Shown: positions 519 to 29,331, counted from the stretch's first letter. The stretch: DNA of 64,000 nucleotides from IMGVR_UViG_3300046543_000266:62001-126000, one strand, 5' to 3'. The notes: a model not told the origin generated them from the letters alone. Translations and numbers: made by a program.

Positions 519-1787
519 ATGACAATCGCACTCAATGCGGCCGCACGTTTAACCGCGGCGATGGCCGACGAGAAGCAATCGTTGGTGTTCCTGCAGTCGC
601 TCGGGTTCAATGGCCTTCGCTACAAGAACGCGGAAGAGGATCGCATCCGCTTCCACTACACGACGTATAACGAGCAGTTCCTCATCAAGCACTTTGGCAA
701 GCCCGAAAGCATCAAGATCGGCAAAGTGTGGAAGTTCGGTACGGAAGGCGCTATCCTCGTGCGCACCACTATGAGTCTGGTGGTGCTCCGCAATGCCAAA
801 GGCAACGCCAAGCGTCGGGCACCTGCTCCAGTCGCACCCGTTGCACCTATCGAGACGCATGTTCCGGCACCGGCACCGGCTCCCGCGCCAGAGCCGAAGC
901 TTCCTCCGGCACAGGATCCGAATGTTCCAGGGGCTAAGGACAACGACGACGCGAATGTCCCGGTCACGCATTTGCCTGACAATCTGGTCAAGTTCTACAG
1001 CCGAGCCAAGGCACTGAAGGACGACCGGATATACCGTAAGCGCTTCATGGCTCTGCTGTGGCATTACCTGAACACCAACAAGTTCGGCGGTCAGTTGAAG
1101 GAACCACGCTTCAACTTGCTCAAGGATCAAGATGCGTATCGGATGCGACTGCGTGGTCGTTGGTGGCCGGGTAAGCGCGTGCTGGATATCGCGCCTCGTC
1201 TGTACAACGCACAGCAGAACTTCTTCGTCGAGATCTTCCTCCACGAGATGTGCCATCAGGCAGTGTCCGAAATCGACCACGCGGACTTCGACCCATCCGA
1301 GCGTTACCATAAGGGACACGGTCCGTACTGGCAAGACTGGATGCGCAAGGTCGGCTTGAACCCATTGCGGTTCGATCCGAATGACAACTCGACCTACATG
1401 ACCGAGGACGAGAAAGAAGAACATAAAGAACGCGTTGAACAGCGTAAAGAAGCATCGGAAGAACTGCGTGATCGGGGCATCACCCGTCTGATGTATTACG
1501 AGGGTATCACACCGGCAACCGCAGTGTGGCAGGGGAAGATCTTGGTTGGTCTGGCAGTATGCCCGACCGCCAAGAACGGTAAGGCTATCGCATTCCTCGA
1601 CATCAACGAGTTGCCCGGCAATTCGTTCAAGCTCGTAGCAGGAACCGCACTGTACAAGTTTTCGGGTACAGAAGAGCAGAAGGCCACGTTGTTGAGTGCC
1701 CCGTATCTGAGTAAGGCGAAGCGCATTGCTGATTACTACGGCGATAAGGCTCTTCTTCGTCAGCTCAAGCGGACGCGTCGTATCTAA
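519..1787 (+). CDS. SprT-like zinc metalloprotease with N-terminal NAAARL tag and Ala/Pro linker
   Basis: LHEMCHQ (HExxH) followed by HKGHGPYWQDWMRKVG (SprT HG..W...M motif); APAPAPAPEP linker. Confidence 0.8.
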   Translation: MTIALNAAARLTAAMADEKQSLVFLQSLGFNGLRYKNAEEDRIRFHYTTYNEQFLIKHFGKPESIKIGKVWKFGTEGAILVRTTMSLVVLRNAKGNAKRRAPAPVAPVAPIETHVPAPAPAPAPEPKLPPAQDPNVPGAKDNDDANVPVTHLPDNLVKFYSRAKALKDDRIYRKRFMALLWHYLNTNKFGGQLKEPRFNLLKDQDAYRMRLRGRWWPGKRVLDIAPRLYNAQQNFFVEIFLHEMCHQAVSEIDHADFDPSERYHKGHGPYWQDWMRKVGLNPLRFDPNDNSTYMTEDEKEEHKERVEQRKEASEELRDRGITRLMYYEGITPATAVWQGKILVGLAVCPTAKNGKAIAFLDINELPGNSFKLVAGTALYKFSGTEEQKATLLSAPYLSKAKRIADYYGDKALLRQLKRTRRI

Positions 1788-1849
1788 TCAAAACACAATC
1801 ACCCACCTTCCCACACTCGTACCCCCCATAATCCATTGGAGTGCAGTGT

Positions 1850-3496
1850 ATGATATCTATCAGTAGCCCGGTTGCAGGCAGTGTCGTAAGCGGTACGGTG
1901 AACATCACCGGATCGTCCAGTCAATCAGTAAGCGCTCAGGTCGGAGCATCGGCACCCGGTACGCCGGTGGTCCTGCCTAGCGCAAGCTTCTCTGTGTCAG
2001 TCGATGTGTCCGCGAATGTTGGCCCTGTCGATCTGACGGTCACCAACAGTGCAGGCGAGTCGGCCGTCGTATCCGTAATCGCCAACATGTCCGCAGACGG
2101 CACAACGACGCCTCCGGCCGCCAAGATTGTCGACGCGTCGGGCAACCTCTGGACGGTCGATCAAGGTCACGCAGCCAAGAATGGTGCTTGGGTGTCCACG
2201 GGTTCGCCTACCGCATTCACCGAGTTGGTGTATTGGGGTGGTGTGATCTACGGTCACAACGCGACCGGTTGGGTGAAGAACACGGCTGCTCCGTGGGTTG
2301 CCACCACGGATCCGCGTCCGGCAGCACCGACCATCACGATGAGCCGACCGCTGAACAACGCGGTCTCCGGTTCGCTGTGTACGGTTTCGGGTACGACCAA
2401 CCAGACGTCGGTCACGATCAAGGACGGTTCCACAGTGTTGGCAACGGTGGTCCCGGCAGCAGACGGTACGTTCAGCAAGCAAGTACGCCTCAGCGGTGCT
2501 GGCGCACGGAACGTCAACGTAGCGGCGTCGTCAGCCACGGCATCCGCGACTGTCAACGTTGGAAGCGCATTGCCCGCGAAGATCTTCTACGGCATGAACG
2601 GTCACATGTGTTACGCCGATGGTAGCTGGTCCACCTACTCGAAGGCGTCGCAGCTCGCTTTCCTGAAGGACCTCGGCTGCACCATGTATCGTGCTGACGT
2701 AGCATCTGGCTTCATGGCCGACGTCATCAAGACGCAGTTGTCGGCTGGTGGTTCCTTCTACAACCAAGGTATCGGATTCATCCCGGTACTGAACGCTGTG
2801 TCCGCAGGTTGGACGACCGGTATGACGGAAACGGCTGCCTACAACCTTGGGAAGAGTCTGGGTGTGGCGGTAGCTACTTCGCTCAATGGTCTGGTCGATT
2901 ACATCGAGTGCGGTAACGAGCTCGACGTGCCGATCAAGATTGGTGGTAACGGAAGTCAGCCGTCGGACTGGAGCCAGACGACGTGGCCCTCGTATCGCGG
3001 CGTACTGCGTGGGATGTACGACGGCGTGAAGAGCATCAACACCGACATTCAGGTGGGCGTCAACATCGGTATCCCGATGGCGTATGGTGCGCTCATCATG
3101 CTGTGGAATGGTACGGAACCCAACGGCACGACGGGTAAACCGAAGCTGCGTTGGGACTTCACTGCCTATCACTGGTACGAGTCGAGTGGTGACATCGAGC
3201 ACGCTGGTGGACCGGCCAACGTCAACATTCCGCAACTGCTGAAAGATCAGTTCGGCGTTCCCACTATCTTCACTGAGTGGGGCTGGCAGTCCAACACAGG
3301 TAACGCACCGGCATACGTCACCAATGCGATGACGCAGTATCGCAACAGCGCCAACTTCAAGGACAAGTACGGCATCCTGTGTATCATGCAATACTGCATG
3401 ATCGACCCGACTTACGGGTTGGTTCAGGCAGACGGAGTCACCAAGAATCCGGCTTACACCACGGCGAAGAACTTCATCGCGGCTAATCCGGCGTAA
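1850..3496 (+). CDS. Ig-like domain + clan GH-A glycoside hydrolase (probable virion surface protein)
   Basis: Two Big-like beta-sandwich segments (ISISSPVAGSVVSGTVNITG; ITMSRPLNNAVSGSLCTVSGT); catalytic-type motifs ECGNELD and IFTEWG; GGAG RBS 8 nt before ATG 1850. Confidence 0.7.
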   Translation: MISISSPVAGSVVSGTVNITGSSSQSVSAQVGASAPGTPVVLPSASFSVSVDVSANVGPVDLTVTNSAGESAVVSVIANMSADGTTTPPAAKIVDASGNLWTVDQGHAAKNGAWVSTGSPTAFTELVYWGGVIYGHNATGWVKNTAAPWVATTDPRPAAPTITMSRPLNNAVSGSLCTVSGTTNQTSVTIKDGSTVLATVVPAADGTFSKQVRLSGAGARNVNVAASSATASATVNVGSALPAKIFYGMNGHMCYADGSWSTYSKASQLAFLKDLGCTMYRADVASGFMADVIKTQLSAGGSFYNQGIGFIPVLNAVSAGWTTGMTETAAYNLGKSLGVAVATSLNGLVDYIECGNELDVPIKIGGNGSQPSDWSQTTWPSYRGVLRGMYDGVKSINTDIQVGVNIGIPMAYGALIMLWNGTEPNGTTGKPKLRWDFTAYHWYESSGDIEHAGGPANVNIPQLLKDQFGVPTIFTEWGWQSNTGNAPAYVTNAMTQYRNSANFKDKYGILCIMQYCMIDPTYGLVQADGVTKNPAYTTAKNFIAANPA

Positions 3497-3501
3497 TTTT
3501 A
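3495..3501 (+). promoter_or_regulatory. AATTTTA late-type promoter motif
   Basis: Same heptamer as upstream of virion genes; followed directly by a hairpin, target transcript unclear. Confidence 0.35.
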
Positions 3502-3509
3502 CGGTCATC

Positions 3510-3537
3510 GGTGGTGAGGCTAACACGGCTCACCACC
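3510..3537 (+). terminator. Stem-loop after glycoside hydrolase gene
   Basis: GGTGGTGAG / CTCACCACC 9-bp stem; weak U-tract. Confidence 0.5.
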
Positions 3538-3577
3538 TTCGCCGCATCTACCCTCGACAAGATCATCACCGGCCAGT

Positions 3578-3585
3578 GTAAATAG
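3578..3585 (+). promoter_or_regulatory. GTAAATAG promoter motif (DNA-metabolism class)
   Basis: Recurrent motif, about 25 nt upstream of dCMP deaminase ATG. Confidence 0.6.
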
Positions 3586-3610
3586 CAGGTATCTAACAAA
3601 GGTATCTGCT

Positions 3611-4060: not shown

Positions 4061-4064
4061 CGAT

Positions 4065-5795: not shown

Positions 5796-7145
5796 ATGGC
5801 CACGAACGCCGCTCAACGCCTCACCGCAACTGCTGCCCAACGCAAGAACCCCTCCAATACCAAGACAAAGGCTCGCGCTAACATGAACACGGAAGCAACC
5901 CGCGTGTGCGCCGTTGAACTGCCGAAGTTCCGGTACATCGACGACGTCACCCGTTTCCTCGACACGATGCGTGACGAGATCGACGAGTTGGGTCAGCTCG
6001 TGAAGGTTCAGCAACAGGCTCTGGCCTATCTGCAACGTCCGCGCGCTTTCGTGAAGGCTGCGATGGAAGTATCGGCTGCTGGCTTTTCCTTCAACATCAA
6101 CACTCCGGCCGGTGGTTCCAAGACTCACCTGAAGCGCAAGATCGACCCGGAACTTCCGAAGTTTGTGATTCCGAACATCACGAAGCTGCGCGAGCAGTAC
6201 GCGCTGTCCGAAGATCTGTATGAGAAGCATCGCATGTTGCAAGCTGTCGAGACGCAGGTTGCCATGCAGTTTCCGGAACGCAGCGGCAAGGAATACAACA
6301 ACGCAATCGGCGCGATCAAGGAACTGAAGGACAAGGTCGGTGCGCAGCTGAAGGAAGTTCTGGGCTTCCTGAACTCGGTGGCGTCGGAACACGTACCGAA
6401 GACCTTCATGAAGTACCGTGAAGCGATCATGCAGGAAATCTCCGAGCACGTGATGTTCGAGCAGTCGGAGCAGTTCATGTACGTGAATACCAGCCCGGCG
6501 AAGGAACTGGTGTTCACCAACTACATCATGCTGCAGAATGCGACCAACGACGAAGGCAAGACCACGCCGCATCTGTACATCAGCATCCAGTGGACGGTCG
6601 GCGCTGGCGTCAAGGTGCAAGTCAACCACGAGTTCGAGTTGCCCGCGCAGCTGATGAAGGAAGGCGGCACCGAAGTGGAAAGCGCTGGCGAAGCAGTGAA
6701 GGCTATCAGCCATCTGCTGGACCTCGAAGACTTCAGCACGTCGCTGGGTGTTATCCCGCTGGCAACCCAACTGCGCATGGAACCGTCGCAAATCACGCCG
6801 ACGATGTTCACGTACAAGGACTTCATCAGCCGCATCGACTTCGACACGAACAGCCTGACGTTCATCCTGCGCAAGGGCACCACCCAAGAGCAAGTCGACG
6901 AGATCAAGTATCCGCTGTACGAAGAAGTCAAGGCGCTGTTCCAGAAGGATCTGAACAAGAGCCGCAAGGCCAAGCTCAAGGCGAAGATCAGCCGCCAGAA
7001 GATCAGCTTCGAGCTCATCAACGTGGCCGAGCGTGGCGAAGTCAACAACCACGATGCTGAGTTCCTCGCCGACCGCTTCGGTCTGAACGACAGCCAACTG
7101 CGCAAGGTTGTGAACTTGCTCAACGAAGGCAACAGGGACCAGTGA
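5796..7145 (+). CDS. putative internal head protein (NAAQRL tag)
   Basis: 449-aa ORF with strong codon bias, AGGA RBS, N-terminal TNAAQRLTA. Confidence 0.6.
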   Translation: MATNAAQRLTATAAQRKNPSNTKTKARANMNTEATRVCAVELPKFRYIDDVTRFLDTMRDEIDELGQLVKVQQQALAYLQRPRAFVKAAMEVSAAGFSFNINTPAGGSKTHLKRKIDPELPKFVIPNITKLREQYALSEDLYEKHRMLQAVETQVAMQFPERSGKEYNNAIGAIKELKDKVGAQLKEVLGFLNSVASEHVPKTFMKYREAIMQEISEHVMFEQSEQFMYVNTSPAKELVFTNYIMLQNATNDEGKTTPHLYISIQWTVGAGVKVQVNHEFELPAQLMKEGGTEVESAGEAVKAISHLLDLEDFSTSLGVIPLATQLRMEPSQITPTMFTYKDFISRIDFDTNSLTFILRKGTTQEQVDEIKYPLYEEVKALFQKDLNKSRKAKLKAKISRQKISFELINVAERGEVNNHDAEFLADRFGLNDSQLRKVVNLLNEGNRDQ

Positions 7146-7321
7146 TGAAACCGTTGCCGCGTGTGAGTCCCGCAGTTGAAGAGGTTCCCACTGGCGACGT
7201 AGGCACTCGGATTGGTATCGATCCGGTGCCTCCCACCATTCCGGTACAAGGGCAACGACAAGTCAAGTCACGCAGCGCCGTCAAGTTGAACGCTGCCCGG
7301 CGACTGGCAAAGGATAAATGA
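7145..7321 (+). CDS. 58-aa protein with C-terminal LNAARRL tag (missing from ORF track)
   Basis: Translated by hand: MKPLPRVSPAVEEVPTGDVGTRIGIDPVPPTIPVQGQRQVKSRSAVKLNAARRLAKDK; TGATG overlap with both neighbours. Confidence 0.7.
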   Translation: MKPLPRVSPAVEEVPTGDVGTRIGIDPVPPTIPVQGQRQVKSRSAVKLNAARRLAKDK

Positions 7322-9876: not shown

Positions 9877-10194
9877 ATGTGGGAACGTAGAGCCCGTTCG
9901 GGGCGCAGGAATTCACACGGTATCGCCAAGATCCGGCGAGATACGTATAACACCTCGAACGGGTTCTCCGTGAAGGCTGGATGGTGGGAGATCCGCGACA
10001 AGGTCTGGAAGCGAGACGGTGGTAAGTGCCGCTCGATGACTAGTGGCGTCTTCTGCCTGAAGCCGGGCACCGAAGTGCATCACATCATCCCGCTGTCCAA
10101 CGGCGGGACCACCACGATGGCTAACCTCATCACTCTGTGTCAGGGCTGCCACGATAAGCGTCATCGGCATCTATTCCGAGCGCGTTCCCGATAA
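9877..10194 (+). CDS. HNH endonuclease
   Basis: RDKVWKRDGGKC...EVHHIIPLSNGGTTTMANLITLCQGCHDKRH. Confidence 0.9.
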   Translation: MWERRARSGRRNSHGIAKIRRDTYNTSNGFSVKAGWWEIRDKVWKRDGGKCRSMTSGVFCLKPGTEVHHIIPLSNGGTTTMANLITLCQGCHDKRHRHLFRARSR

Positions 10195-10210: not shown

Positions 10211-10573
10211 ATGACCGTAAAACTCCACGCGGGAATGCGCCTCCTGGCTGACAGCAATGAAGCCGGAGTGGCACTCACTGCCATCAAGAAGATCATCGGC
10301 CCCCACTTCGTCACCGACGAGGACCACGCAGAACAACGCATCCTGTGGCGTAGCAGCAAGATCCAAGCCGAGCTCGACTTGACGCTCGACGACGAAGACA
10401 TGCTGCTGTTCAGCTTCCGCACCCGAGGCTTTGCCGGCGGATTTGACGCTGAGGGCCACACGGCGCACGAGCTGTTCGCCGACATCCGCAAGCAAGTGAC
10501 CGAGTATCAGCCGTCGGGTCGCGTACCCAACGACATCGCGGCTCTGCGCAAGCGGTTTGCCAACATCCGATAA
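10211..10573 (+). CDS. putative internal head protein (LHAGMRL tag variant)
   Basis: 120-aa ORF beginning MTVKLHAGMRLLA. Confidence 0.6.
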   Translation: MTVKLHAGMRLLADSNEAGVALTAIKKIIGPHFVTDEDHAEQRILWRSSKIQAELDLTLDDEDMLLFSFRTRGFAGGFDAEGHTAHELFADIRKQVTEYQPSGRVPNDIAALRKRFANIR

Positions 10574-10582: not shown

Positions 10583-11020
10583 ATGGATAAGCAGCAACTC
10601 CAAGAACTGATCGCGGCGTTTCTGAAAGTGAATCCGACGCCGACGGACGATCAGGTACATGCGCTGGCTGGCGCAGTCAACCTCGACCACGAGACGTTCG
10701 AAGCCGTTATGTACGAGATGCTGGCCGAGTCGGACGAAGTCAACGCCACATCCGAGCATACCGACGCTGAGAAGGTTCTCGACGGCGAGTACGACCCGAA
10801 CACCACGACGACCGACGATCTGGTGCTGAACGACGGAGCACCGGAAGGTACCTCCAGCCAACAGCAAGTGCAAGACTCGACGTTGGACGACGGTGTAGCA
10901 CCGGACGACGTTGGCCTCGACGTGAACTCGGACCAGTCGGCACTTCTGGACGATGGCGAAGTGATTCGCAGTCTGGCTGCAGTCAAGGTGAACGCGGCTG
11001 CTCGTCTGAAGGCAAACTGA
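10583..11020 (+). CDS. acidic putative head core protein with C-terminal VNAAARL tag
   Basis: D/E-rich ORF ending VKVNAAARLKAN; AAGGA RBS. Confidence 0.65.
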   Translation: MDKQQLQELIAAFLKVNPTPTDDQVHALAGAVNLDHETFEAVMYEMLAESDEVNATSEHTDAEKVLDGEYDPNTTTTDDLVLNDGAPEGTSSQQQVQDSTLDDGVAPDDVGLDVNSDQSALLDDGEVIRSLAAVKVNAAARLKAN

Positions 11021-12263: not shown

Positions 12264-12320
12264 ATGAAACGTGGAACAGTTACCAAACATCAACATAACA
12301 AGGTCATCTATTATGGCTGA
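12264..12320 (+). CDS. 18-aa leader peptide overlapping SNF2 start
   Basis: GAGGA RBS, MKRGTVTKHQHNKVIYYG*, stop overlaps SNF2 ATG (ATGGCTGA). Confidence 0.4.
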   Translation: MKRGTVTKHQHNKVIYYG

Positions 12321-18159: not shown

Positions 18160-19017
18160 ATGCCACTACACGTTCCGAAGGCGTTTCAAAACGCGGGCGT
18201 CTCCACGTCCAAATCACAAGAGCGCGATCGCGTCTCGTACAACAAGAACCGTCTGCGGGCCAACGAACAAGGTATCGCGGATGCACTGAACACCAACGCA
18301 GTCGACACTCCGGTAACACAGGCACTCGAGACGTTCGAAGCCGAGAAGGAAATGGGTCGGATGAATGGCCTCGACTACGAGACGTGGTTGCCGTTCGCTG
18401 CCAAGCTGTACAAGATCAGCCCGCGCATCGAGGACTACATCATTGTCAACACGATGATCTGCCCGTCGGACATTCCGAATCGTAACGGCATCGCGTTCCC
18501 GGCCACGGAGCTCGCGAAGTTCCAGCCGCCGCCCACCAATCGCATGGCGTACAAAGCGTGGGCTGGCTGTCCTGTCCATCTCGAGCACGACAACGAAGTT
18601 CACGAGAAAGCCTATGGCGTGATTCTCGACGCCGCATTGACGAAAGTCTCGGGCTACGGTGGTGGCAAGCTGTGGAAGGTCATGGGGTTGCAGGCAATCG
18701 ACAAGAACAAGTATCCCGACATGGCGCAGAAGGTGTTGACGAAGGAAATCAACACCTACTCGATGGGAGCTCTGGTCGATTACTTCACGTGCGGCTACTG
18801 CGGACAGGAATGCAGCAGCAAGCGGGTGTGCGGTCACATCTCCAGTCCGGCTAACGTCAACTGGAAACAGTACCGTGACTTCGACGGTTCGTCGCATTTG
18901 GCGTTCCTGAACGCTCATGGCATTCAGCCGATCGAATGTTCCATCGTTGCTGACCCGGCGTGGGCTCCTGCTCTGTCCGACGAAGTCTTCGATCCGTGGG
19001 CCAACACCGGAGGCTAG
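18160..19017 (+). CDS. prohead (maturation) serine protease with Cys-rich insertion
   Basis: DIPNRNGIAF, VHLEHDN, YSMG, CGYC...C...CGH pattern of assemblin/HK97-type prohead proteases; lies upstream of scaffold and capsid. Confidence 0.7.
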   Translation: MPLHVPKAFQNAGVSTSKSQERDRVSYNKNRLRANEQGIADALNTNAVDTPVTQALETFEAEKEMGRMNGLDYETWLPFAAKLYKISPRIEDYIIVNTMICPSDIPNRNGIAFPATELAKFQPPPTNRMAYKAWAGCPVHLEHDNEVHEKAYGVILDAALTKVSGYGGGKLWKVMGLQAIDKNKYPDMAQKVLTKEINTYSMGALVDYFTCGYCGQECSSKRVCGHISSPANVNWKQYRDFDGSSHLAFLNAHGIQPIECSIVADPAWAPALSDEVFDPWANTGG

Positions 19018-19018
19018 C

Positions 19019-19669
19019 ATGGTCAAGCTCAATGCTGCGGCGCGACTCATTAACGCCGCAGGTCCGCATCCGGCTGCTACGCAATTCGCCGAGAAGCACG
19101 GCATTCCCATCTACAACGTGGACAACGCGATTGCTGCCAGCCGATTCGGGCTGGTAGTTGCCGAGATCGATAAGGCAGTACAATCGCTGTACGCTCGCGG
19201 GGTTCCCCGCAAGTCCATAAACGTCCACGAGATCAAGTTGATAAAGGGTAAGTCGTTCCCTGCCAACGGTTGGGATGCAGGTGGATTGTTTGAGGATCAC
19301 GACGGTTACGGAATCGTGTCTCTGGCTGCTGGCCAGAAGTTCGGTGACAGTCCGGTGCTCAAACCCGGTGGATGGGCAATAGCGGGCGCGTACATGAACG
19401 ATTCGGTACGCCACGAATTCGGTCATGGTCTGGTCCGATCGTTGATGACGTTCGGTGAAAACCCGACGATGCTTCGGAACGCGTATGTCCGCGAGAAGAG
19501 AGAACCGGGCGGTATCCAACCCAGACTGTCCAAGTACGCTGCTGAGAATGAGTACGAGTACTTCGCGGAAGCGTTTGCTGCGTTCATGCATCCGAAGTTC
19601 AAGACCAGCGGCATCAAGATCTACCCGCCGTTACTAGAAGTGTTCGAGAAACACTTCGGCGTCAAGTAA
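19019..19669 (+). CDS. zincin metallopeptidase (lethal-factor-like) with N-terminal LNAAARL tag
   Basis: VRHEFGHGL (HExxH) and LSKYAAENEYEYFAEAFAAF; GGAGG RBS before ATG 19019. Confidence 0.75.
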   Translation: MVKLNAAARLINAAGPHPAATQFAEKHGIPIYNVDNAIAASRFGLVVAEIDKAVQSLYARGVPRKSINVHEIKLIKGKSFPANGWDAGGLFEDHDGYGIVSLAAGQKFGDSPVLKPGGWAIAGAYMNDSVRHEFGHGLVRSLMTFGENPTMLRNAYVREKREPGGIQPRLSKYAAENEYEYFAEAFAAFMHPKFKTSGIKIYPPLLEVFEKHFGVK

Positions 19670-19911: not shown

Positions 19912-21450
19912 ATGGCGATCGTCACCAAGAAGCGGAAAGTCGCAGCAGCGCGCGAAAGCACGTCGTTGCACTTTTCGAACGAAACCACCAAGGCGGTGGA
20001 AGAGAGCAAGCAGCCGCTGCTCAACCATCAAACGGCTGACACTCTGATCGATCCGGAAGACACGACGGACGATCAAGGTTCGACGCACTTCACGAACGAC
20101 ACGAAGTACAGCAAGAAGACGAATCGTCTGCACACCACTGCCGCGAAGAAGCCGGTTCTGGCGCTGGAAGTTCCCGAAGCGTTCGGCAAGAAGGTGCCGA
20201 AGGACGAGGCTCCGGCCGACGAAGCAACGGAAGCATCGCTCGACGACGTGGCTGCTGAAGACGACGGTTGCGAAACCGGTCTGCAAGACACGCAGCACAT
20301 GCCGAACGACATCGATCCGACGGAAGGCTACCTGACGACGGGTTCGGAAGAAGGCGACGACGAGTTCGACGAAGACCTCGAAGACGACGAAGACGAAATC
20401 GACGCCAGCGCCGAATTCGAAGAAGGCACCGGCACGAATCCCCAGTCACTGCTCGAAGCAGACGACGAAGAATGGGATCCGGACTCGGCAGTCGTTGCTG
20501 AATTCGGCGACGAAGACGGCGAAGACGAGTTCTCGGAAGAAGATGAATCGGAAGGCGAAGCTGAAGTCGAAGCCGCTCCGGCATCGGACGACGACATGTC
20601 GGTGGTCGACGTGGACGGTACGGACGACGAAGGCGACGACGTTGTGTTCGCATCGATCGGCCTGCAACTGCACGCCATCAAAGCCAACCGCATCATCGCA
20701 TCGATCGGCAAGAAGCGCGCGATCAAGGCCGGTCACGGCGACGTGTATCTGTCGGATCAGTTCCAAGACGTAGTGGGCGTCGAGATGTCGAAGCACGGTC
20801 TGCGCGCTGGTCTGCAGAAGATGGGCTTCGCACTCGCAACGTTCAACGTGGCGAAGAACGAAGTCGTGAACAAGCGCGTCGAAGCGAAGGCTGCCAAGGT
20901 CACGTCGGCTGTCCGTCGCACCACGCATCAGTCGAACGAAGCACTCGGCCAGTGCTTGGCGATCGCCGCTGTCGGTATCAACCGTCAGTACTTCAAGGAC
21001 GCACGCAACGAACTGCGCGCATCGCTCGAAGAAGAACTCGAAGCGGCTGGCGTTCGTGGCGCGTCGCGTCTCGTGCGCAAGGTGTTCGCATCGAAGGGCG
21101 TCGACTACGCGAAGGCGATTCTCACGCTGGCAAACAAGCTGGTGAACATGCCGGAAACGACGCGTAACCAGTTCGCGGCCGCTCTCGACATGACCAACGA
21201 CGGCGAGATCGAAGACGACGAAGACCTGTTCGCTGAACCGTCGGATCCGGAATTCGTTACGGCCGAAGGCGAAGACGAAGAATTCGACGACGAGTTCGAA
21301 GACGAAAACGACGCACCGAGTTCGGTCCAAGCTGCGCTGGCTCGCCCGGCAAGCAAGGTCCAACGCCGTGAGATCAACGCTGCGAAGACCGGTTACTCGG
21401 TCACCGCAATGGCGATCCTGTCGGGCAAAGCACCGCTGCCGTTCGCCTAA
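19912..21450 (+). CDS. prohead core/scaffold protein
   Basis: Extremely acidic 512-aa protein between protease and capsid genes; strong codon bias. Confidence 0.65.
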   Translation: MAIVTKKRKVAAARESTSLHFSNETTKAVEESKQPLLNHQTADTLIDPEDTTDDQGSTHFTNDTKYSKKTNRLHTTAAKKPVLALEVPEAFGKKVPKDEAPADEATEASLDDVAAEDDGCETGLQDTQHMPNDIDPTEGYLTTGSEEGDDEFDEDLEDDEDEIDASAEFEEGTGTNPQSLLEADDEEWDPDSAVVAEFGDEDGEDEFSEEDESEGEAEVEAAPASDDDMSVVDVDGTDDEGDDVVFASIGLQLHAIKANRIIASIGKKRAIKAGHGDVYLSDQFQDVVGVEMSKHGLRAGLQKMGFALATFNVAKNEVVNKRVEAKAAKVTSAVRRTTHQSNEALGQCLAIAAVGINRQYFKDARNELRASLEEELEAAGVRGASRLVRKVFASKGVDYAKAILTLANKLVNMPETTRNQFAAALDMTNDGEIEDDEDLFAEPSDPEFVTAEGEDEEFDDEFEDENDAPSSVQAALARPASKVQRREINAAKTGYSVTAMAILSGKAPLPFA

Positions 21451-22361: not shown

Positions 22362-23453
22362 ATGCGTACAAAAGTTAAGGTTCGTGCGTCCAAGACGCCG
22401 ATGGTGGCAGCCAGCGAGTATCGCTTCGACGGCGCGCTGACGGGTGAACGTGCAATCGGTCGCAACGGCGAAATCAACGCCAGCAACAAGCGTGACCTCA
22501 TCAACCGCCAAATGGCTTTCGTGCAAGCTGCTTCGAACGGCCAAGTCGCCGGCGATGCAGTGTTCGCTTCGGCAGAACAAGCAACGAAGGCTTCGAAGGA
22601 ACTCATCGCTGCTGCGTTCAACGACGGCGAAGCTCACCGCGTTCTGGGCGAGCGCATGGCTGATTCGCTGTACATCACGGCGAATCGCCAAGGCTTCATG
22701 CGCAAGTACCTGACCAAGATCACGGTCGAGCAGGGCGCAATCCCCCGCTTCCCGCTGCGCACGAAGAACGTGACGGCTGTGTACTCGACGTCGCCGACGA
22801 AGATCCAGTCGCAAATCACGCGCGACAAGTGGTTCACGCCGCCGGAACTGCAAGTGGTCACCCGTCCGTTCATTCCGATGAACGAACTGAACCAGTCGGC
22901 TGGCGACGTGCTGCAAGAAAAGTACGTGGAAGCAACGGAAGCCATCATGGTCGGTGAAGACCGCCTGTGGTACAACCAAGTGAACCAGATCGTCGGCGTG
23001 GACAACCCCCTGTCGATCATCTCTGGTCAGCTGACGCCGTACACGTTCGCGCAAGTCATGACCAACGTCACGCGTTGGGGCCTGAAGGCACCGCACGTCC
23101 TGATCGCCACGGACATCTATCAGGACATCATCGGTAACGCGGACTTCTTCAACGCGATCGATCCGGTTGCTCGCCACGAACTGCTGTTGACCGGCGAACT
23201 CGGCGTGATGTACGGTTGCACGATCACGTCGGACGCGTACCGTCACCCGGAGCACAAGGTGCTGAACCAAGGCGAATTCTTCGTGATCGCCGACGCTCTG
23301 AACCACGGCGCGTACTCGGATCGCGGCGGTCTGCAATCGCAGCCGACCGACATCTCGGTCGAGAAGATCCCGGGTCGCGGTTGGGTGATGTTCGAATCGC
23401 TCGCCGTGTCGGTTGCCAACAGCCGCTCGGTAGCAAAGGGCCTCCGTATCTAA
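22362..23453 (+). CDS. major capsid protein (HK97-fold, inferred)
   Basis: 363 aa, follows protease-scaffold-decoration; DIYQDII...ELGVMYGCTIT...GEFFVIA pattern typical of HK97-fold C-terminal half; strong codon bias. Confidence 0.8.
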   Translation: MRTKVKVRASKTPMVAASEYRFDGALTGERAIGRNGEINASNKRDLINRQMAFVQAASNGQVAGDAVFASAEQATKASKELIAAAFNDGEAHRVLGERMADSLYITANRQGFMRKYLTKITVEQGAIPRFPLRTKNVTAVYSTSPTKIQSQITRDKWFTPPELQVVTRPFIPMNELNQSAGDVLQEKYVEATEAIMVGEDRLWYNQVNQIVGVDNPLSIISGQLTPYTFAQVMTNVTRWGLKAPHVLIATDIYQDIIGNADFFNAIDPVARHELLLTGELGVMYGCTITSDAYRHPEHKVLNQGEFFVIADALNHGAYSDRGGLQSQPTDISVEKIPGRGWVMFESLAVSVANSRSVAKGLRI

Positions 23454-24770: not shown

Positions 24771-25088
24771 ATGGCTACGAAGGTTATCAATACCGGCCGT
24801 GTTCCTCTTCAAGTCGGCATCATTCTGGAAGACGGCACCAAGTCGTCTATCCGTGTGATGGGTCGCGGTCGTCCTGATCTGGCGGAAGGTGTGACCGTCG
24901 ATCCGAACTGGCTGGTACTGCACGGCGGCGACGTCCGTGTGGTGGAAGAGAAGTCGATTCAAGTGGCCGAAGTCGCCACGCAGATCGACAACACGAAGAA
25001 AGAAACGGCCCCGGCAGCAACGACTGCCACGCCGTCCACCGTCGAAACCCCGGCTGCGACCGTCACTGCTAAGGAGGACAAGCAATGA
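24771..25088 (+). CDS. hypothetical virion protein
   Basis: AGGAG RBS; ATGA overlap with the sheath gene. Confidence 0.65.
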   Translation: MATKVINTGRVPLQVGIILEDGTKSSIRVMGRGRPDLAEGVTVDPNWLVLHGGDVRVVEEKSIQVAEVATQIDNTKKETAPAATTATPSTVETPAATVTAKEDKQ

Positions 25089-27022
25089 CTATCTCGGCAA
25101 AGCAAGGTTCGAAGGTAATCGTACAGGAAATCAACCTGTCGCAAGTGATCACCAGTGCTTCCACCTCGGTGGTTGCTCAAGTGGTCGTCGCCAAACAAGG
25201 CCGTACCATCCCGGTCCAGTTCACCAACGCGCAAGACTATCTGGCGGAGTACGGTAATCCGAACGCTCAGGTCAGCTTCGACGTGTATTGCGGACTCGAC
25301 TACTTCGGCGAAGGCAATCAGCTGTGGGGTCTGCGCGTTGCTGGCACGGGCGCTCTGTACTCGGCACTGCTGATGTACACCGACGGTTCGGCTACGCATC
25401 TGCTGCCGATCGCCGCAGGTGTGGTTGACCCGACCAAGCCCAACTGGACGGCCATCCTCCCGAGCGGCGCGCAGAACGAAGCAATCGCGTTGTTCTACCC
25501 GAACAAGGGTCCGGGTTCGTACGGCGACAACGTAGCGCTGTCGATCACCAGCAACAATATCGCGACGCCGACGGGTTTCGCCGTGACCTCGGCAGCGACG
25601 GGCGGTACGCTGGTTCCGGCCACGTATCAGTACCAGATCTCCAGCGTGTCGCTCACGGGCGAGACTCTGGCAACCAATCCGGCGCAAGTCGTGATCGGCG
25701 GCGCGGCAGTAACGAACGTCGTGAATCTGTCGTGGACAGCGGATCCGCAAGCAATCGGGTACAACATCTACGGTCGCGTAGGTGCGGGCGTTGGCCTACT
25801 CGCTCAAGTTGGTCAGGGCGTGACCACGTTCACGGATACCGGCGCGCTGACTCCGGATACCACCAAGACTCCGGTGGTGAGCCCGGCTAACGCAGCACAG
25901 CCGCTCCCGACGTTCGGCCTCAACGTGTTCGACACGACGCAGTCCACGTCGTACCCGGTGGAACAGTTCAGCGTGTCGCTGGATGACTTCACCGACAGCA
26001 CGGGCACCGAAACGGAACTGGAACAACGCATCAACCCGTTCTCGACGTACATCCAAGTGACCTCGAATGTGCCGGCTCTGCTGGACACACCGGCAGTCAC
26101 GACGACGTCGCTGACTTCGATGAAGGGCGGTGACAGCGGTGCGGCTCCGACGAGCTTCCAAGTTGCGGCAGCGTGGAACACCTTCAGCAACAAGCAACTG
26201 TACGCGGTCAACATCCTGCTCAACTCGGGTCACGCAGATCCGACGGTGCAGTTGGCGATGGATACGTTGGCGCAGAAGCGTGGTGACTGCGTGGCAATGC
26301 TCGACATCCCGTCGGCAAGCCAACAGTTCCAGCAAGCGATCAACTACCGGAACCTCAACCTGAATCTGAATTCCACGTACTCGGCGCTGTTCGCACCCGA
26401 CGTGCTGGAAGCGGATACGATCAACGGCAAGCAACAGTATGTGCCGTTCTCGGGATGGGCGGCAGCACTGTGCGCTCGTACCGATCGGGTTGCCAACCCG
26501 TCGTTCTCGATCGCTGGTCTGAATCGCGGTTTGCTCAACGTGCTGAAGACGCGCTACACCTACGACGACGGCCAAGCGGACGCTCTGTTCAACGCGCAAG
26601 TCAACTACACCAAGACCTTCATCGGTCAAGGTATCGCGCTGTGGGAACAACAGACGTGTGCTGCGCAGTTCTCGGCGCTGTCGTGGGTTTCGGTTCGCCG
26701 TATCGTCAACGTGATCAAGGTCGCGCTGTATCAGTTCTTGCTGTATTCGCTGCAAGAGCCGAACGACGACTTCCTGGGTCGCCAGATCGTTAGCTCGTGC
26801 TCGGATTATCTGCAGTCGATCCAGAACGCGCGCGGCATCTCGAGCTACACGGTGATCTCCGACAGCCAGAACAACTCGGCGCAGGACTTCAACAGCGGCG
26901 TCCGTAACGTGACGGTCATCATCGTCCCGACGATCCCGACGCACATCATCAACTTGCAAGTCGTGATCAGCAAGCAAGGTGTGTCGTTCACGGAAGCCCT
27001 GTCGCAAGTCAATCCGGGCTAA
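25085..27022 (+). CDS. tail sheath protein
   Basis: 645 aa; N-terminal VIVQEINLS, C-terminal PFSGWAAALCARTD...IAGLNRG, LYNAQVN-like segment, SVRR, EPND. Confidence 0.9.
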   Translation: MTISAKQGSKVIVQEINLSQVITSASTSVVAQVVVAKQGRTIPVQFTNAQDYLAEYGNPNAQVSFDVYCGLDYFGEGNQLWGLRVAGTGALYSALLMYTDGSATHLLPIAAGVVDPTKPNWTAILPSGAQNEAIALFYPNKGPGSYGDNVALSITSNNIATPTGFAVTSAATGGTLVPATYQYQISSVSLTGETLATNPAQVVIGGAAVTNVVNLSWTADPQAIGYNIYGRVGAGVGLLAQVGQGVTTFTDTGALTPDTTKTPVVSPANAAQPLPTFGLNVFDTTQSTSYPVEQFSVSLDDFTDSTGTETELEQRINPFSTYIQVTSNVPALLDTPAVTTTSLTSMKGGDSGAAPTSFQVAAAWNTFSNKQLYAVNILLNSGHADPTVQLAMDTLAQKRGDCVAMLDIPSASQQFQQAINYRNLNLNLNSTYSALFAPDVLEADTINGKQQYVPFSGWAAALCARTDRVANPSFSIAGLNRGLLNVLKTRYTYDDGQADALFNAQVNYTKTFIGQGIALWEQQTCAAQFSALSWVSVRRIVNVIKVALYQFLLYSLQEPNDDFLGRQIVSSCSDYLQSIQNARGISSYTVISDSQNNSAQDFNSGVRNVTVIIVPTIPTHIINLQVVISKQGVSFTEALSQVNPG

Positions 27023-27034
27023 AGCTGTAACCAA

Positions 27035-27068
27035 CGAGGCGACAGTGCTAGTACAGGCTGTCGCCTTG
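27035..27068 (+). terminator. Stem-loop after sheath gene
   Basis: AGGCGACAG / CTGTCGCCT stem. Confidence 0.55.
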
Positions 27069-27088
27069 TAGACTAAGAGGTGACTCAG

Positions 27089-27469
27089 ATGGGATTCAAA
27101 CTCAACGCAGCAACGCGCCTTAGTGCTGATACCGAAACCAGCAAGGACGGTAAAGCAGTCAGCCCGGCGAATGGTTTCCGCGAGCAGAACGAGGACAACC
27201 TGAAGGACCGACAGCAAGACAGCCAGAAGTCGGTCGATGAAAAGCCCAAAGCCGAAACCACGGCGGATGCTGAGGGTGACGACGGCGCGAGCACTGGTGA
27301 TACAACTATCACCCTGGACATTCCGCAGGACAACGACGACGATATGAGCTCGATCGACGCTGTGGTAACGGCCGCAGTTAAACGACTGCACGCTGAGCAA
27401 GAAGTCGAAGCGGACGCCGACCCGAAGCTCTTCAACATGGCAAACCAACCGATGGGGCCAATGGCATGA
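27089..27469 (+). CDS. acidic putative internal head protein (LNAATRL tag)
   Basis: GAGGT RBS; MGFKLNAATRLSA. Confidence 0.65.
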   Translation: MGFKLNAATRLSADTETSKDGKAVSPANGFREQNEDNLKDRQQDSQKSVDEKPKAETTADAEGDDGASTGDTTITLDIPQDNDDDMSSIDAVVTAAVKRLHAEQEVEADADPKLFNMANQPMGPMA

Positions 27470-27774
27470 TCATCAATGCGGCTACCCGCCTCAAGGCGTC
27501 GGAATACGAGGTCAAGCTGCACAAAGCTTCTGATCTATTCACCCGATTGAACGCGGTCTTCCGCAACAAGCTGTCGCTGAACAAAGTCGACGCTTCGATC
27601 TGCGTGAAGGACGTCAGCGTGGTGCTGGTCCTCAAAGCGTTGCAGCGCATGGGTTACGACCTACGTGCTCGCGGCGACAGTGAAGCGGCACACATCTTGT
27701 CGCTCAACGGCACGCCTGAACTGCAAGTACAATCGCCCCGCGAGGATTGGGACCCGGTTATCAGTTTCGTCTGA
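27466..27774 (+). CDS. putative internal head protein (INAATRL tag)
   Basis: ATGA coupling; MIINAATRLKA. Confidence 0.65.
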   Translation: MIINAATRLKASEYEVKLHKASDLFTRLNAVFRNKLSLNKVDASICVKDVSVVLVLKALQRMGYDLRARGDSEAAHILSLNGTPELQVQSPREDWDPVISFV

Positions 27775-27793
27775 GACCCGTTGCAGCAATCCC

Positions 27794-27800
27794 AATTTGA
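27794..27800 (+). promoter_or_regulatory. AATTTGA late-type promoter motif
   Basis: Intergenic, upstream of tail tube ATG 27840. Confidence 0.6.
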
Positions 27801-27839
27801 CGGTGTCTTCGACAAACAGACATACTAAGGAGTATCACA

Positions 27840-28346
27840 ATGGCTCGTTCCAGCTTGTATGATGCACAAGCAGTGGCGGACCCGGCTCAGAGTTGGAACT
27901 TCGACTTGTTCCTTCCGGCAATCCCGGGTTCGTCGGATACCCGTGCTCTCACGTGGAAGTGCATGTCCACGGGTCTGCCCGGTTTCCAAATCGAAAAGGT
28001 CGCAGTTCCGCTGCACGGCGTGGAGTTGCAGTACGCTGGCCGCAAGACCTTCAGCCACAGCTTCCAGTCGGTGTTCATGGAAGCCTCGGACTGGTCGACC
28101 CGTTCACAGTTCTACGCTTGGTCCGAAGCTACTCGCTCCTGGGTCAACAACAGCGGCACGTTCGCCAGCGCCTACAAGGTGAATGCGCAGATCGTGGTCT
28201 ACAACGACCTGCCGCAAGTCGCACGCACGATCAACGTGTGGGGTCTGTGGCCCGAACAGATCGCTGACGTAGCGCTGGACGGTGCGAACTCGACGCTGGT
28301 CACGCTCGACATCACGTGGTCGTTCGACTACGTAACGGATGCTTGA
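27840..28346 (+). CDS. tail tube protein
   Basis: 168 aa; DPAQSWNFDL...C.ST.LPG...ELQYAGRKTF...W...Y...G.WP...LD...TWSFDY, T4 gp19-like pattern. Confidence 0.85.
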   Translation: MARSSLYDAQAVADPAQSWNFDLFLPAIPGSSDTRALTWKCMSTGLPGFQIEKVAVPLHGVELQYAGRKTFSHSFQSVFMEASDWSTRSQFYAWSEATRSWVNNSGTFASAYKVNAQIVVYNDLPQVARTINVWGLWPEQIADVALDGANSTLVTLDITWSFDYVTDA

Positions 28347-28348
28347 TC

Positions 28349-28558
28349 ATGATCGTCACCTCGGCGGCATCCCGTCTGGTGGCGGCAACCCACTCGTTTG
28401 CGTTTGAAGTGCGTATCCTTGACGACAACGGCCAGCACGGCGTTTTCCGAAAGACTGTAGACGCAGCAACGCGCGGAGCCGCCTGGATAAAGCTGACCAA
28501 GGATCTCAAGAGTATGAAGGTCCTGGAGTCGGTCTACCAAATCACGAGCACACCATGA
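28349..28558 (+). CDS. small putative internal head protein (TSAASRL tag variant)
   Basis: MIVTSAASRLVAA; ATGA coupling to next gene. Confidence 0.55.
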   Translation: MIVTSAASRLVAATHSFAFEVRILDDNGQHGVFRKTVDAATRGAAWIKLTKDLKSMKVLESVYQITSTP

Positions 28559-29331
28559 AAACCCGACTGCACGCTGCACGTCGGTTGGTAGTTGCAGAAG
28601 GGGAGTGGTTCCACGCGATGGAACCCGAGATGCAGAAGCAGTATCTGGAAGAGCATCCGGGTAGTAAGTACGCGAAGGATCACACGTCAACGGCACCGGC
28701 CAATCCGAAGGCGCTACCTGCGCCCACTCAGAAACCGAAGTCTGAAGTAAAACCTGCTAGTCCGAAGCCGACGCCCGAAGAAGTCAAGAAGGTGTCACCG
28801 AAGGCGAAGGCCGCAGGTAGCAAGGAACGTGTTGACAGCGCTAAGAAGCTGAAGGCAACAGCTCCTGGTCTGGCGTCCCAGTTGATCGGCGGCGTCAAGG
28901 ATTTCGGCCACGATCTGAGTGCAGTTGGCAACTTCCTGAATGGTCACCCCGAGCATGGTGACATGAAGCGTGTTGGTTCGATGCTGGTCACACTTCTAGG
29001 CACGGGCGCAATGATGACGGCTCTGGGTGCAACTGGCCCCGTCGGCTTTCTGGCGTTCATGGCACTGAAGAAGTTGGCGCTTCCCGAGTTGGTTGGATGC
29101 GCGAAGAGCGTGTACAAGGGAACCAAGCGTCAGTTCGCACCTGCGGATCGGTCCAAGATGTTGCCGGAGTATCAGGATGCGTGTGTTCGTTTGCTGGCTG
29201 CTTCTAAGCAAGATCAAGAAACGTTGCTGGAACTGATTGAGCTTCTCGCTGACATGGTTGCTCACGGGGAAATCCCGCAATCGGCTCTCGACGAAGCGCA
29301 AGCAGAACTGGAAGCCACGCACAAGAAGTAA
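28555..29331 (+). CDS. putative internal head protein with hydrophobic hairpin (LHAARRL tag)
   Basis: MKTRLHAARRLVVA; Lys/Pro-rich linker; hydrophobic MLVTLLGTGAMMTALGATGPVGFLAFMAL. Confidence 0.6.
   Translation: MKTRLHAARRLVVAEGEWFHAMEPEMQKQYLEEHPGSKYAKDHTSTAPANPKALPAPTQKPKSEVKPASPKPTPEEVKKVSPKAKAAGSKERVDSAKKLKATAPGLASQLIGGVKDFGHDLSAVGNFLNGHPEHGDMKRVGSMLVTLLGTGAMMTALGATGPVGFLAFMALKKLALPELVGCAKSVYKGTKRQFAPADRSKMLPEYQDACVRLLAASKQDQETLLELIELLADMVAHGEIPQSALDEAQAELEATHKK

What the first reader, a model, noticed from the sequence alone, without database searches (positions are those of the whole stretch)
531..28587. A shared terminal peptide tag (L/V/I)-N/H-A-A-x-R-L-x-A on ten unrelated proteins: candidate capsid-targeting and cargo-loading system
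Seen in sequence, N-terminal copies: LNAAARLTA (SprT protease, 531), TNAAQRLTA (5802), LHAGMRLLA (10223), LNAAARLINA (zincin, 19028), LNAATRLSA (27101), INAATRLKA (27472), TSAASRLVA (28358), LHAARRLVVA (28567). C-terminal copies: VKLNAARRLA (7280) and VKVNAAARLKA (10982). The carriers share nothing else (58-449 aa; enzymes, acidic proteins, a hydrophobic protein). The codons differ at synonymous positions (aat/aac, gcg/gcc/gct/gca, cgt/cgc/cga), so conservation is at peptide level and is not a DNA repeat. All carriers lie in the + strand head/tail block and I saw none in the replication or fibre genes. Established analogy: T4 internal proteins use a short N-terminal capsid-targeting sequence that the prohead protease removes. 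Inference: this is a different, position-flexible address tag that loads a set of proteins, including enzymes, into the head for delivery with the DNA. It could be a tool for packaging foreign proteins.
Basis: partly seen in the sequence, partly recalled or inferred. Interest (0 to 1): 0.92.

Follow-up and report, generated by a model that had tools for sequence, protein, structure and literature searches.

The report
Shared terminal address tag, phage proteins
About eleven unrelated proteins of this RSL1-like giant phage, several of them enzymes, carry the same 12-residue peptide at one extreme end, and the whole phage group keeps it next to the head-building genes, so it is most likely a label that loads proteins into the virus head, as phage T4 does with a different label.

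Summary
A strict pattern finds exactly these ten in six frames of 64 kb, against about 0.6 expected by chance. Eight start 2-5 residues after the start Met. Two end 3-4 residues before the stop. An eleventh carrier, a NUDIX hydrolase, starts 47 nt before the window. The window is a new relative of Ralstonia phage RSL1 and Burkholderia phages BcepSaruman/Sauron.

The tag, M-K-[IL]-[NE]-A-A-x-R-L-x-A-[TS], is kept across this clade, including Achromobacter phage Motura and about 20 uncultured genomes. It sits on non-orthologous proteins: SprT-like, zincin, NUDIX, GNAT and small acidic proteins. Their genes flank the prohead protease and the portal. In 523 kb of independent portal loci, all nine hits scoring 14.9 bits or more are N-terminal. 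Early, replication and fibre regions have none, nor do the more distant phages PaBG and Vibrio GR11A. Each genome has its own tag "dialect", which points to one common receptor.

Best reading (confidence about 0.55): a capsid-targeting, cargo-loading peptide, functionally like the T4 capsid targeting sequence. Removal at a downstream Glu is possible but unproven. Packaging itself is untested. I found no description of the tag in the papers I could search.

The parts
2..511 (+). NUDIX hydrolase, 3' part. The gene starts 47 nt before the window and its product begins with the tag (MTVKLTALTRLLLTE). This is the eleventh carrier.
   Evidence: Pfam NUDIX 3.2e-16. The frame is open to the window edge. 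The full gene is seen on L092:9436-9993. The RSL1 ORF109 and Saruman gp100 NUDIX proteins are also tagged.
519..1787 (+). Carrier 1: SprT-like metalloprotease, 422 aa. Tag core at 528-560 (ALNAAARLTAA), Arg at residue 10.
   Evidence: (PF10263, 1.8e-9). The ortholog L020:1614 is also tagged.
5796..7145 (+). Carrier 2: 449-aa protein with no family hit. Tag core at 5799-5831, Arg at residue 8.
7145..7321 (+). Carrier 3: 58-aa protein with a C-terminal tag (core 7283-7315, four residues before the stop). Its start and stop overlap the neighbouring genes (TGATG and ATGA).
   Evidence: An independent gene call gives it as 58 aa. Saruman gp094 in the same slot has a tag at both ends.
10211..10573 (+). 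Carrier 4: 120-aa protein of a family conserved in the clade. Tag core at 10220-10252.
   Evidence: orthologs in L027, L014, L012 and RSL1 ORF124, all tagged.
10583..11020 (+). Carrier 5: acidic 145-aa protein with a C-terminal tag (core 10985-11017, three residues before the stop).
   Evidence: The C-terminal tag is kept in orthologs of L012, L016, L027, Saruman and Sauron. In RSL1 ORF125, L014 and L018 the same tag lies internally.
18160..19017 (+). Prohead (head maturation) protease. It carries no tag itself. It has an invariant Cys/His cluster (C211, C214, C224, H226).
   Evidence: phrog_18299, 6e-87. Alignments A1 and A2. Remote relatives are annotated as prohead core protease.
19019..19669 (+). 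Carrier 6: zincin-like protein, 216 aa, with an HEFGH motif, directly after the protease gene. Tag core at 19025-19057.
   Evidence: Pfam gives only a sub-threshold zincin family match (20.1 bits against a cutoff of 27.4). A GGAGG ribosome-binding site lies 8 nt before the ATG. The same slot holds tagged but unrelated genes in 7 other lineages.
19912..21450 (+). Very acidic 512-aa protein between protease and capsid genes. It is a probable scaffolding protein and a candidate receptor for the basic tag. It is untagged.
   Evidence: Sequence composition. The 'ATPase' label comes only from phrog_20988. Its C-terminal end is conserved in the clade.
22362..23453 (+). Major capsid protein. The N-terminal 19 residues end in A-A-S-E before Y-R-F, a candidate maturation cut that is conserved in the clade.
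   Evidence: phrog_2522, 1e-99. PDB 6wkk phage G capsid protein, 5e-16. N-termini.
27089..27469 (+). Carrier 7: very acidic 126-aa protein between the sheath and tube genes. N-terminal tag core at 27098-27130, plus a second looser copy (VVTAAVKRLHAE) at 27362-27397.
   Evidence: Tagged orthologs in Saruman gp077, L009, L012 and L027.
27466..27774 (+). Carrier 8: 102-aa protein. Tag core at 27469-27501, Arg at residue 8.
28349..28558 (+). Carrier 9: 69-aa protein. Weakest tag (TSAASRL), core at 28355-28387.
   Evidence: (leave-one-out 10.8 bits).
28555..29331 (+). Carrier 10: 258-aa protein. Tag core at 28564-28596. The conserved domain starts right after the tag (EGEWF).
   Evidence: tagged orthologs in L009, L018, L016 and Saruman gp075.

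Best explanation
The peptide is an address label of about 12 residues. Its consensus is M-K-[IL]-[NE]-A-A-x-R-L-x-A-[TS], usually at the very N-terminus and sometimes at the very C-terminus. RSL1-like giant phages use it to recruit a changeable set of otherwise unrelated proteins to one common receptor while the prohead is built. The proteins then end up inside the head and can enter the host cell with the DNA.

Shown here: the tag exists. It is terminal. It is conserved at peptide level across the clade. It sits on non-orthologous carriers that include SprT-like, zincin, NUDIX and GNAT enzymes. Its genes cluster around the prohead protease and portal genes. All tags of one genome drift together.

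Inferred:
- The receptor is a prohead component. Candidates are the very acidic scaffold-like protein at 19912-21450 and the inner face of the capsid protein.
- The tag binds as a short basic peptide with alternating apolar and polar residues, possibly as an added beta-strand.
- In many carriers the prohead protease cuts it off after the first Glu that follows (A-[ST]-E or similar), as in T4 and SPN3US.
- The enzymes act on host targets early in infection.
For: - Non-random and terminal: 10 observed against about 0.6 expected, and all ten are at protein ends.
- Peptide level, not DNA level.
- Clade-wide: 57 N-terminal tags in 16 loci. A at -3 in 53/57. R and L were fixed by the search pattern, and A at -3 was restricted to A or S. 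The Arg is residue 8 in 31/57. Motura also has the tag.
- Independent test set: 523 kb around portal genes, scanned with a PSSM that lacked the Met and Lys columns. Of 12 hits, 9 are N-terminal directly after an ATG and flank the portal gene. Those nine score 14.9-25.9 bits and the other three at most 14.8. T4, PaBG and Vibrio controls gave 0 hits.
- Whole RSL1 genome: in-frame terminal tags occur only at 58-78 kb (the head block) and next to the portal. There are none in early, replication or fibre regions.
- Modular cargo: the slot after the protease holds tagged but mutually unrelated genes. Tagged carriers include NUDIX, GNAT, SprT-like and zincin proteins.
- One receptor: within-genome tag identity at variable positions is 0.41 against 0.22 between genomes, with 0 of 5000 label permutations reaching this difference. 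RSL1 ORF124 carries a new RSL1-style tag upstream of a decayed older one.
- Cleavage hint: Glu is enriched at +5 to +8, and [AGSTV]-x-E occurs within 14 residues in 49% against 20% of controls. The capsid protein has a conserved A-[ST]-E near its N-terminus.
- Precedent: the T4 capsid targeting sequence and the SPN3US A-x-E cleavage site.
Against: - There are no virion proteomics for any member, so presence in the particle, location in the head, cleavage and injection are all untested.
- Four carriers (27089-29331) lie between and after the tail sheath and tube genes. One of them shares a conserved C-terminal motif with RSL1 ORF141 that could serve another assembly step.
- A Glu after the tag is common but not universal: E at +5 in 13/57, and none nearby for some. 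The C-terminal tags have no obvious upstream cut site.
- The protease could not be tied to the T4 gp21 family by any test run here.
- Proteins with two tags are not needed by a simple label model.
- The window phage's own portal-adjacent gene lacks the tag although its RSL1 and Motura orthologs have it.
Confidence: 0.55

Rival explanations
1. The tags bind each other, or a small hub, and build an internal protein body or core in the head. Proteins with two tags act as cross-links. Here the tag is a building joint, not only a label.
For: Several proteins carry two copies: the window carrier at 27089, Saruman gp094 with one at each end, and RSL1 ORF125 and its L014 homolog with two internal copies. 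The concerted change of tags within a genome fits self-recognition as well as it fits a single receptor. Many carriers are small and acidic, as core proteins tend to be.
Against: Enzymes with a single tag are the majority. The tag is short, and nothing here tests whether it self-associates. This is a variant of the head-loading model rather than an alternative to it.
Confidence: 0.15
2. The tag docks proteins to some other assembly partner, such as a tail or neck component or a phage or host chaperone. T4 offers a precedent: the N-terminus of its capsid protein directs it to GroEL. On this view the carriers are assembly factors or tail-associated proteins.
For: Four window carriers lie beside the sheath and tube genes (parts list). 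The family at 27089 is conserved in that position across the clade. [quoted passage not shown]
Against: Most tagged genes flank the protease and portal, not tail genes. The baseplate and fibre blocks of the window and of RSL1 have no tags. NUDIX, GNAT and SprT-like enzymes are not plausible tail parts or chaperone-dependent structural proteins.
Confidence: 0.12
3. The tag is a turnover or timing signal, meaning a terminal degron read by a host or phage protease, or a zymogen propeptide that keeps the enzymes silent until late. It has no role in packaging.
For: The tag is strictly terminal at either end. Several carriers are potentially harmful enzymes (proteases, NUDIX). An acidic stretch follows the tag.
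Against: This does not explain the tight linkage to the protease and portal genes. It does not explain the many small non-enzymatic carriers, or the genome-specific dialects in phages that infect related hosts. In several carriers the conserved domain begins immediately after the tag, so an inhibitory propeptide fold is unlikely.
Confidence: 0.07
4. There is no function. On this view the similarity is a leftover of common ancestry or recombination among N-terminal gene segments, or a translation-start preference.
For: Met-Lys-Ile/Leu starts are common in well-expressed genes. The tags could spread by short recombination events.
Against: Synonymous codons vary freely while the residues are held. 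The A-A-x-R-L-x-A part and the C-terminal copies cannot be a start-codon context. The tag persists down to about 50% protease identity on non-orthologous proteins, and the independent loci give only terminal hits.
Confidence: 0.03

Closest known systems
Capsid targeting sequences (CTS) of phage T4 internal proteins IPI, IPII, IPIII and Alt, removed by the prohead protease gp21 (Mullaney and Black 1996; review PMC9026906)
   Same: A short peptide of 10-19 residues sits at the very N-terminus of proteins that are otherwise unrelated. The cargo varies between related phages and includes a host-modifying enzyme (Alt). The system is linked to a prohead protease. A Glu often follows the peptide. T4 Alt is processed at both ends, so terminal flexibility also has a precedent.
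   Different: I did not compare the tag with the T4 CTS sequence. The consensus is much sharper and is held across a clade. There are true C-terminal and occasional internal or double copies. Each genome has its own dialect. The protease could not be shown to be a gp21 homolog. Packaging and cleavage are not demonstrated.
N-terminal propeptides of head and ejection proteins of phiKZ-like giant phages (SPN3US gp245 cuts after A-x-E; PMC10052503)
   Same: Giant myovirus heads hold many internal or ejection proteins that are processed at N-terminal propeptides ending in small-x-Glu. Here A-[ST]-E often follows the tag and also occurs near the capsid protein's N-terminus.
   Different: The SPN3US passages I read describe a cleavage motif, not a common address sequence. 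Here the shared element is the address peptide itself.
Cargo-loading (targeting) peptides of encapsulins, which are HK97-fold nanocompartments (my own knowledge, not tested here)
   Same: A short terminal peptide, at either end of the cargo, is enough to load diverse enzymes into an HK97-fold shell. The cargo genes lie next to the shell gene. The peptide binds in an extended form.
   Different: This is a tailed phage with portal, sheath, tube and fibres. The receptor is unknown and may be the scaffold rather than the shell. The sequences are unrelated.
C-terminal capsid-targeting tail of the HK97 protease and the coat-binding C-terminus of scaffolding proteins such as that of P22 (my own knowledge)
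   Same: A terminal peptide that takes a protein into the procapsid.
   Different: Those signals sit on the protease or the scaffold itself. Here the protease and the scaffold-like protein lack the tag, and about eleven other proteins carry it.

Membership tests
T4-type capsid targeting sequence (CTS) propeptide | Short peptide (10-19 aa) at the extreme N-terminus, shared by otherwise unrelated proteins | tested here: met
   Eight of the ten window copies have the Arg at residue 8-10. In the clade it is residue 8 in 31 of 57 tags. The carriers are unrelated outside the tag.
T4-type capsid targeting sequence (CTS) propeptide | The peptide ends at a prohead-protease cut site (x-x-Glu) | tested here: inconclusive
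   [AGSTV]-x-E occurs within 14 residues after R-L in 49% of tags against 20% of controls. E is at +5 in 13/57. The pattern is not universal and is absent before the C-terminal tags.
T4-type capsid targeting sequence (CTS) propeptide | The phage encodes a gp21-family (S77) prohead protease | tested here: inconclusive
   A head maturation protease is present (phrog_18299) and remote relatives are annotated as prohead core protease. There is no Pfam or PDB sequence hit. hhalign against T4 gp21 is not significant (probability 0.1%), though it pairs the NRN..P and G..H motifs. The structure model was too poor to use.
T4-type capsid targeting sequence (CTS) propeptide | Carriers are packaged inside the head through the scaffolding core and are delivered to the host | not testable with these tools
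   I found no virion proteome for this clade in the papers I could search or fetch.
Encapsulin cargo-loading peptide | Short terminal peptide on cargo enzymes encoded next to the shell gene | tested here: met
   Terminal tags occur on NUDIX, SprT-like, zincin and GNAT proteins encoded in the capsid, protease and portal gene blocks.
Encapsulin cargo-loading peptide | The shell is a closed nanocompartment without portal, tail or genome packaging | tested here: not met
   The window encodes a tail sheath, tube and fibres. The same contig has a portal, and the relatives are plaque-forming myoviruses.
Sec/Tat signal peptide or membrane anchor | Hydrophobic core of about 10 or more residues after a basic N-region (twin Arg for Tat), at the N-terminus only | tested here: not met
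   Mean hydrophobicity of the tag is about 0, with alternating polar and apolar residues. C-terminal copies exist.
DNA repeat or regulatory element | Conservation at nucleotide level, including synonymous sites and flanks | tested here: not met
   There are four Ala, four Arg and five Leu codons in the conserved columns, and the upstream sequences are unrelated.

The most novel reading that the evidence does not exclude
A portable, position-independent peptide of about 12 residues docks on a single prohead receptor, either the inner face of the HK97-fold capsid protein or the acidic scaffold. Its alternating pattern suggests docking as an added beta-strand. Phages of this clade would use it, much as encapsulins load cargo, to fill their heads with an exchangeable arsenal of host-directed enzymes (NUDIX, GNAT, SprT-like, zincin) that enter the cell with the DNA. 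The receptor and tag would co-evolve as a lineage-specific code.
Probability: 0.3. Interest if true: 0.8.

Novelty: new variant of a known kind. Interest (0 to 1): 0.62.

Why it matters
If the reading holds, genome sequence alone would show which proteins a whole clade of giant phages carries into the cell: every gene with the tag. That gives a ready list of candidate early-acting effectors (NUDIX, GNAT and two kinds of metalloprotease) in phages of Ralstonia, Burkholderia and Achromobacter.

It would be a second, much better defined example of the T4 capsid-targeting principle. Natural variation between genomes (the dialects) could be used to find the receptor. A short tag that works at either end of a protein would also be a simple handle for loading reporter proteins into phage heads.

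If it is instead a joint of an internal body or a tail-assembly signal, it is still an unusually clear short linear motif for studying virion assembly.

Tried and rejected
- Protease family. Pfam found nothing on the window protein or on 16 homologs. A profile search of PDB sequences found nothing. The AlphaFold model from 16 sequences was poor (pLDDT 51), so its Foldseek matches are meaningless (best E 1.6). hhalign against T4 gp21, fetched from the T4 record, gave probability 0.1%.
- Literature. The RSL1 genome and cryo-EM papers are not held. Searches on RSL1, BcepSaruman/Sauron, Motura, capsid targeting and jumbo-phage propeptides found no description of this tag. The jumbo-phage comparative paper, the PaBG paper and the Matilda preprint do not mention it. 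A Burkholderia glumae phage paper turned out to concern a phiKZ-like phage.
- DNA-level repeat or shared promoter: rejected.
- The 18.9-bit hit at the fibre N-terminus (46599): rejected as PF12571.
- More distant relatives of the protease: PaBG (36% identity) and Vibrio phage GR11A (44%) have no tag near the protease, so the tag is limited to the RSL1/Saruman/Motura clade.
- 'The gene after the protease is always tagged': only partly true. It holds for the window and seven other lineages. Saruman, L009, L012 and Motura have no gene in that slot, and L016 has an untagged one.
- Amphipathic helix: the hydrophobic moment is low at 100 degrees (0.05-0.47) and higher at 170 degrees in 13 of the 16 tags tested, so a strand-like alternating pattern fits better. 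This is a calculation, not a structure.

Full report
**What the window is.** Its capsid gene is about 83% identical in DNA to those of Ralstonia phage RSL1 and Burkholderia phages BcepSaruman and BcepSauron. Gene order matches theirs. The same sequence lies on a 217.6 kb IMG/VR contig (L004 and L070).
- The + strand block 1-30.5 kb holds these genes: NUDIX, SprT-like, dCMP deaminase, a 510-aa 'head-tail connector' homolog, an HNH endonuclease, a 1577-aa SNF2-related protein, the prohead protease (18160-19017), a very acidic 512-aa protein, a 233-aa virion protein, the capsid protein (22362-23453), the sheath (25085-27022) and the tube (27840-28346).
- Replication genes follow on the - strand, and fibre and baseplate genes follow on the + strand.

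- All ten copies are in frame where stated.
- A strict pattern finds exactly these ten in six frames. Chance would give about 0.6, with at most 3 in 200 shuffles.
- A PSSM separates them cleanly from background. The one intermediate hit is the N-terminus of a fibre of family PF12571.
- Eight copies have their Arg at residue 8-10. Two end 3-4 residues before the stop.
- The carriers share only the tag.
- Codons vary freely at synonymous sites and the upstream DNA is unrelated.
- An eleventh carrier exists. The NUDIX gene that runs off the window's 5' edge starts 47 nt upstream with a tag.
- Of the 22 genes in the 9.4 kb before it, none has a clear tag. One Lys/Ala-rich N-terminus is ambiguous.

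**The tag is a clade character.** I fetched 27 loci around protease homologs and 52 around portal homologs. I also read the whole RSL1 genome in pieces and regions of Saruman, Motura, PaBG, Vibrio GR11A and T4.
- Fifty-seven N-terminal tags from 16 loci give the consensus M(-7) K(-6) [IL](-5) [NE](-4) A(-3) A(-2) x R(0) L(+1) [LK] A(+3) [TAS](+4). Glu is enriched at +5 to +8.
- Motura, at 56% protease identity, has the tag. PaBG (36%) and Vibrio GR11A (44%) do not.
- In RSL1 the in-frame terminal tags are on ORF109 (NUDIX), 112, 120, 123, 124, 126 (from an upstream start), 127 and 133. These all lie at 58-78 kb. One more is on ORF210 beside the portal gene. The rest of the 231 kb has none.
- As an independent test I used a PSSM without the Met and Lys columns, trained on the protease loci only, on 523 kb of portal loci. 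It gave 12 hits. Nine are N-terminal directly after an ATG and flank the portal gene. Those nine score 14.9-25.9 bits and the other three at most 14.8. The controls gave none.

**The cargo is modular.**
- Tagged proteins include SprT-like proteases (window, L020), a zincin (window), NUDIX hydrolases (window phage, RSL1, Saruman) and GNAT acetyltransferases (L020, L021). There are also many small, often acidic proteins without family hits.
- The slot after the protease gene holds a tagged gene in the window and seven other lineages. The proteins there are mutually unrelated, 60 to 216 aa long.
- Orthologs can differ in having the tag. The small gene after the portal is tagged in RSL1 and Motura but not in the window's phage.

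**The tags of one genome drift together.**
- Each genome has its own dialect: [VF]-K-L-N-A-A in the window, Y-[DE]-I-x-A-A-V-x-R-L in RSL1 (one residue longer), M-K-I-E-A-A in L020 and L021, L-Q-A-K in L024, and E-I-Q-A in Motura.
- Identity at the variable positions is 0.41 within genomes and 0.22 between them. None of 5000 label permutations reached that difference. The result holds without RSL1.
- RSL1 ORF124 shows an RSL1-style tag placed upstream of what looks like the decayed older tag of its orthologs.
- Because the carriers within a genome are unrelated, this is best explained by one common binding partner per phage, or by self-recognition.

**Likely mechanism.**
- The tag is basic (net +1 to +4). 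It alternates apolar and polar residues. Its hydrophobic moment is higher at strand periodicity than at helix periodicity in 13 of the 16 tags tested.
- The protein between the protease and capsid genes is extremely acidic with a helical core and a conserved C-terminal end. It looks like a scaffold.
- The capsid protein has a conserved A-[ST]-E about 19 residues from its start. A-[ST]-E or a similar site often follows the tag. This resembles the cut sites of T4 gp21 and SPN3US gp245.
- I therefore propose this sequence of events: the tag binds a prohead component during assembly; many tags are then removed by the prohead protease; the freed cargo stays in the head and enters the cell with the DNA.
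- Only the first layer (existence, placement, conservation, linkage, concerted evolution) is shown. The rest is inference from the T4 and phiKZ-like precedents.

**Weak points.**
- There is no proteomic evidence for the clade.
- The protease family could not be established.
- Four carriers lie among tail genes.
- Some proteins have two tags, which suggests bridging or avidity.
- The C-terminal tags lack an obvious cut site.

**Comparison and novelty.**
- In function, the closest known system is the T4 capsid targeting sequence. In T4, N-terminal propeptides of 10-19 residues on divergent internal proteins are sufficient to package foreign proteins. Alt is processed at both ends.
- The present tag is a different, sharper motif in an unrelated giant-phage clade. 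It occurs at either end, has lineage-specific dialects, and sits on a richer set of enzymes.
- I found no description of it in the papers I could search. I rate it a new variant of a known kind.

Noticed in passing
window 12271-17004 (+): A 1577-aa protein with an SNF2-related domain sits in the middle of the head gene block. It is conserved there across the clade (RSL1 ORF129, Saruman gp088 and Motura gp182, all annotated 'DNA helicase'). It is untagged. It could be a virion-borne enzyme.
   Followed up: partly
window 19912-21450 (+): This 512-aa protein is annotated 'ATPase' in RSL1 and Motura through a PHROG. It is extremely acidic, with long Asp/Glu runs, a helical core and a conserved C-terminal end. 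It looks like a scaffolding protein, so the ATPase label is probably wrong.
   Followed up: partly
window 18160-19017 (+): The prohead protease carries an invariant C-x-x-C ... C-x-H cluster (C211, C214, C224, H226 in 16 homologs). This suggests a zinc-binding insert, which I have not seen described for prohead proteases.
   Followed up: no
window 27089-27469 (+) and L001:24462-25493 (RSL1 ORF141): The acidic carrier between sheath and tube ends in D-P-K-L-F-N-M-A-N-Q-P-M-G. RSL1 ORF141 ends in nearly the same peptide. This is a second conserved terminal motif of unknown role.
   Followed up: no
window 22362-22420 (+): The first residues of the capsid protein (hydrophobic-K-hydrophobic-x-A-S) resemble the first half of the tag and then diverge. 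This may be chance, or both may be read by the same partner.
   Followed up: no
window 9877-10194 (+): An HNH endonuclease gene (Pfam HNH, 1e-12) is inserted among the head genes. It lies at the same place in RSL1 (ORF122), Saruman (gp091) and Motura (gp179).
   Followed up: no
L070:11900-12200 and other portal loci: The small gene after the portal forms a conserved family (M-Y-S-F ... D-W-F-T-Y-K-G ... F-G-V-R). Members carry the tag in RSL1 and Motura but not in the window's own phage. Other clade members have a tagged gene at that position, but I did not check whether it belongs to the same family.
   Followed up: partly
L092:567-989 (about 8.9 kb upstream of the window): A 140-aa Lys/Ala-rich protein starts M-K-A-S-K-L-K-A-A-K-L-R-L-K-V-K-E-A-K-A-T-E. 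This loosely fits the RSL1-style tag register. It lies among early-looking genes and may simply be a coiled coil.
   Followed up: no
window 7142-7147 and 7318-7321: Carriers 2 and 3 and the following 510-aa gene overlap by TGATG and ATGA. This suggests translational coupling of the three.
   Followed up: no
window 46587-48878 (+): The fibre N-terminus (I-T-N-A-G-A-A-L-L-A-A) mimics the tag in a PSSM scan but belongs to Pfam PF12571, the tail-collar fibre N-terminal domain.
   Followed up: yes
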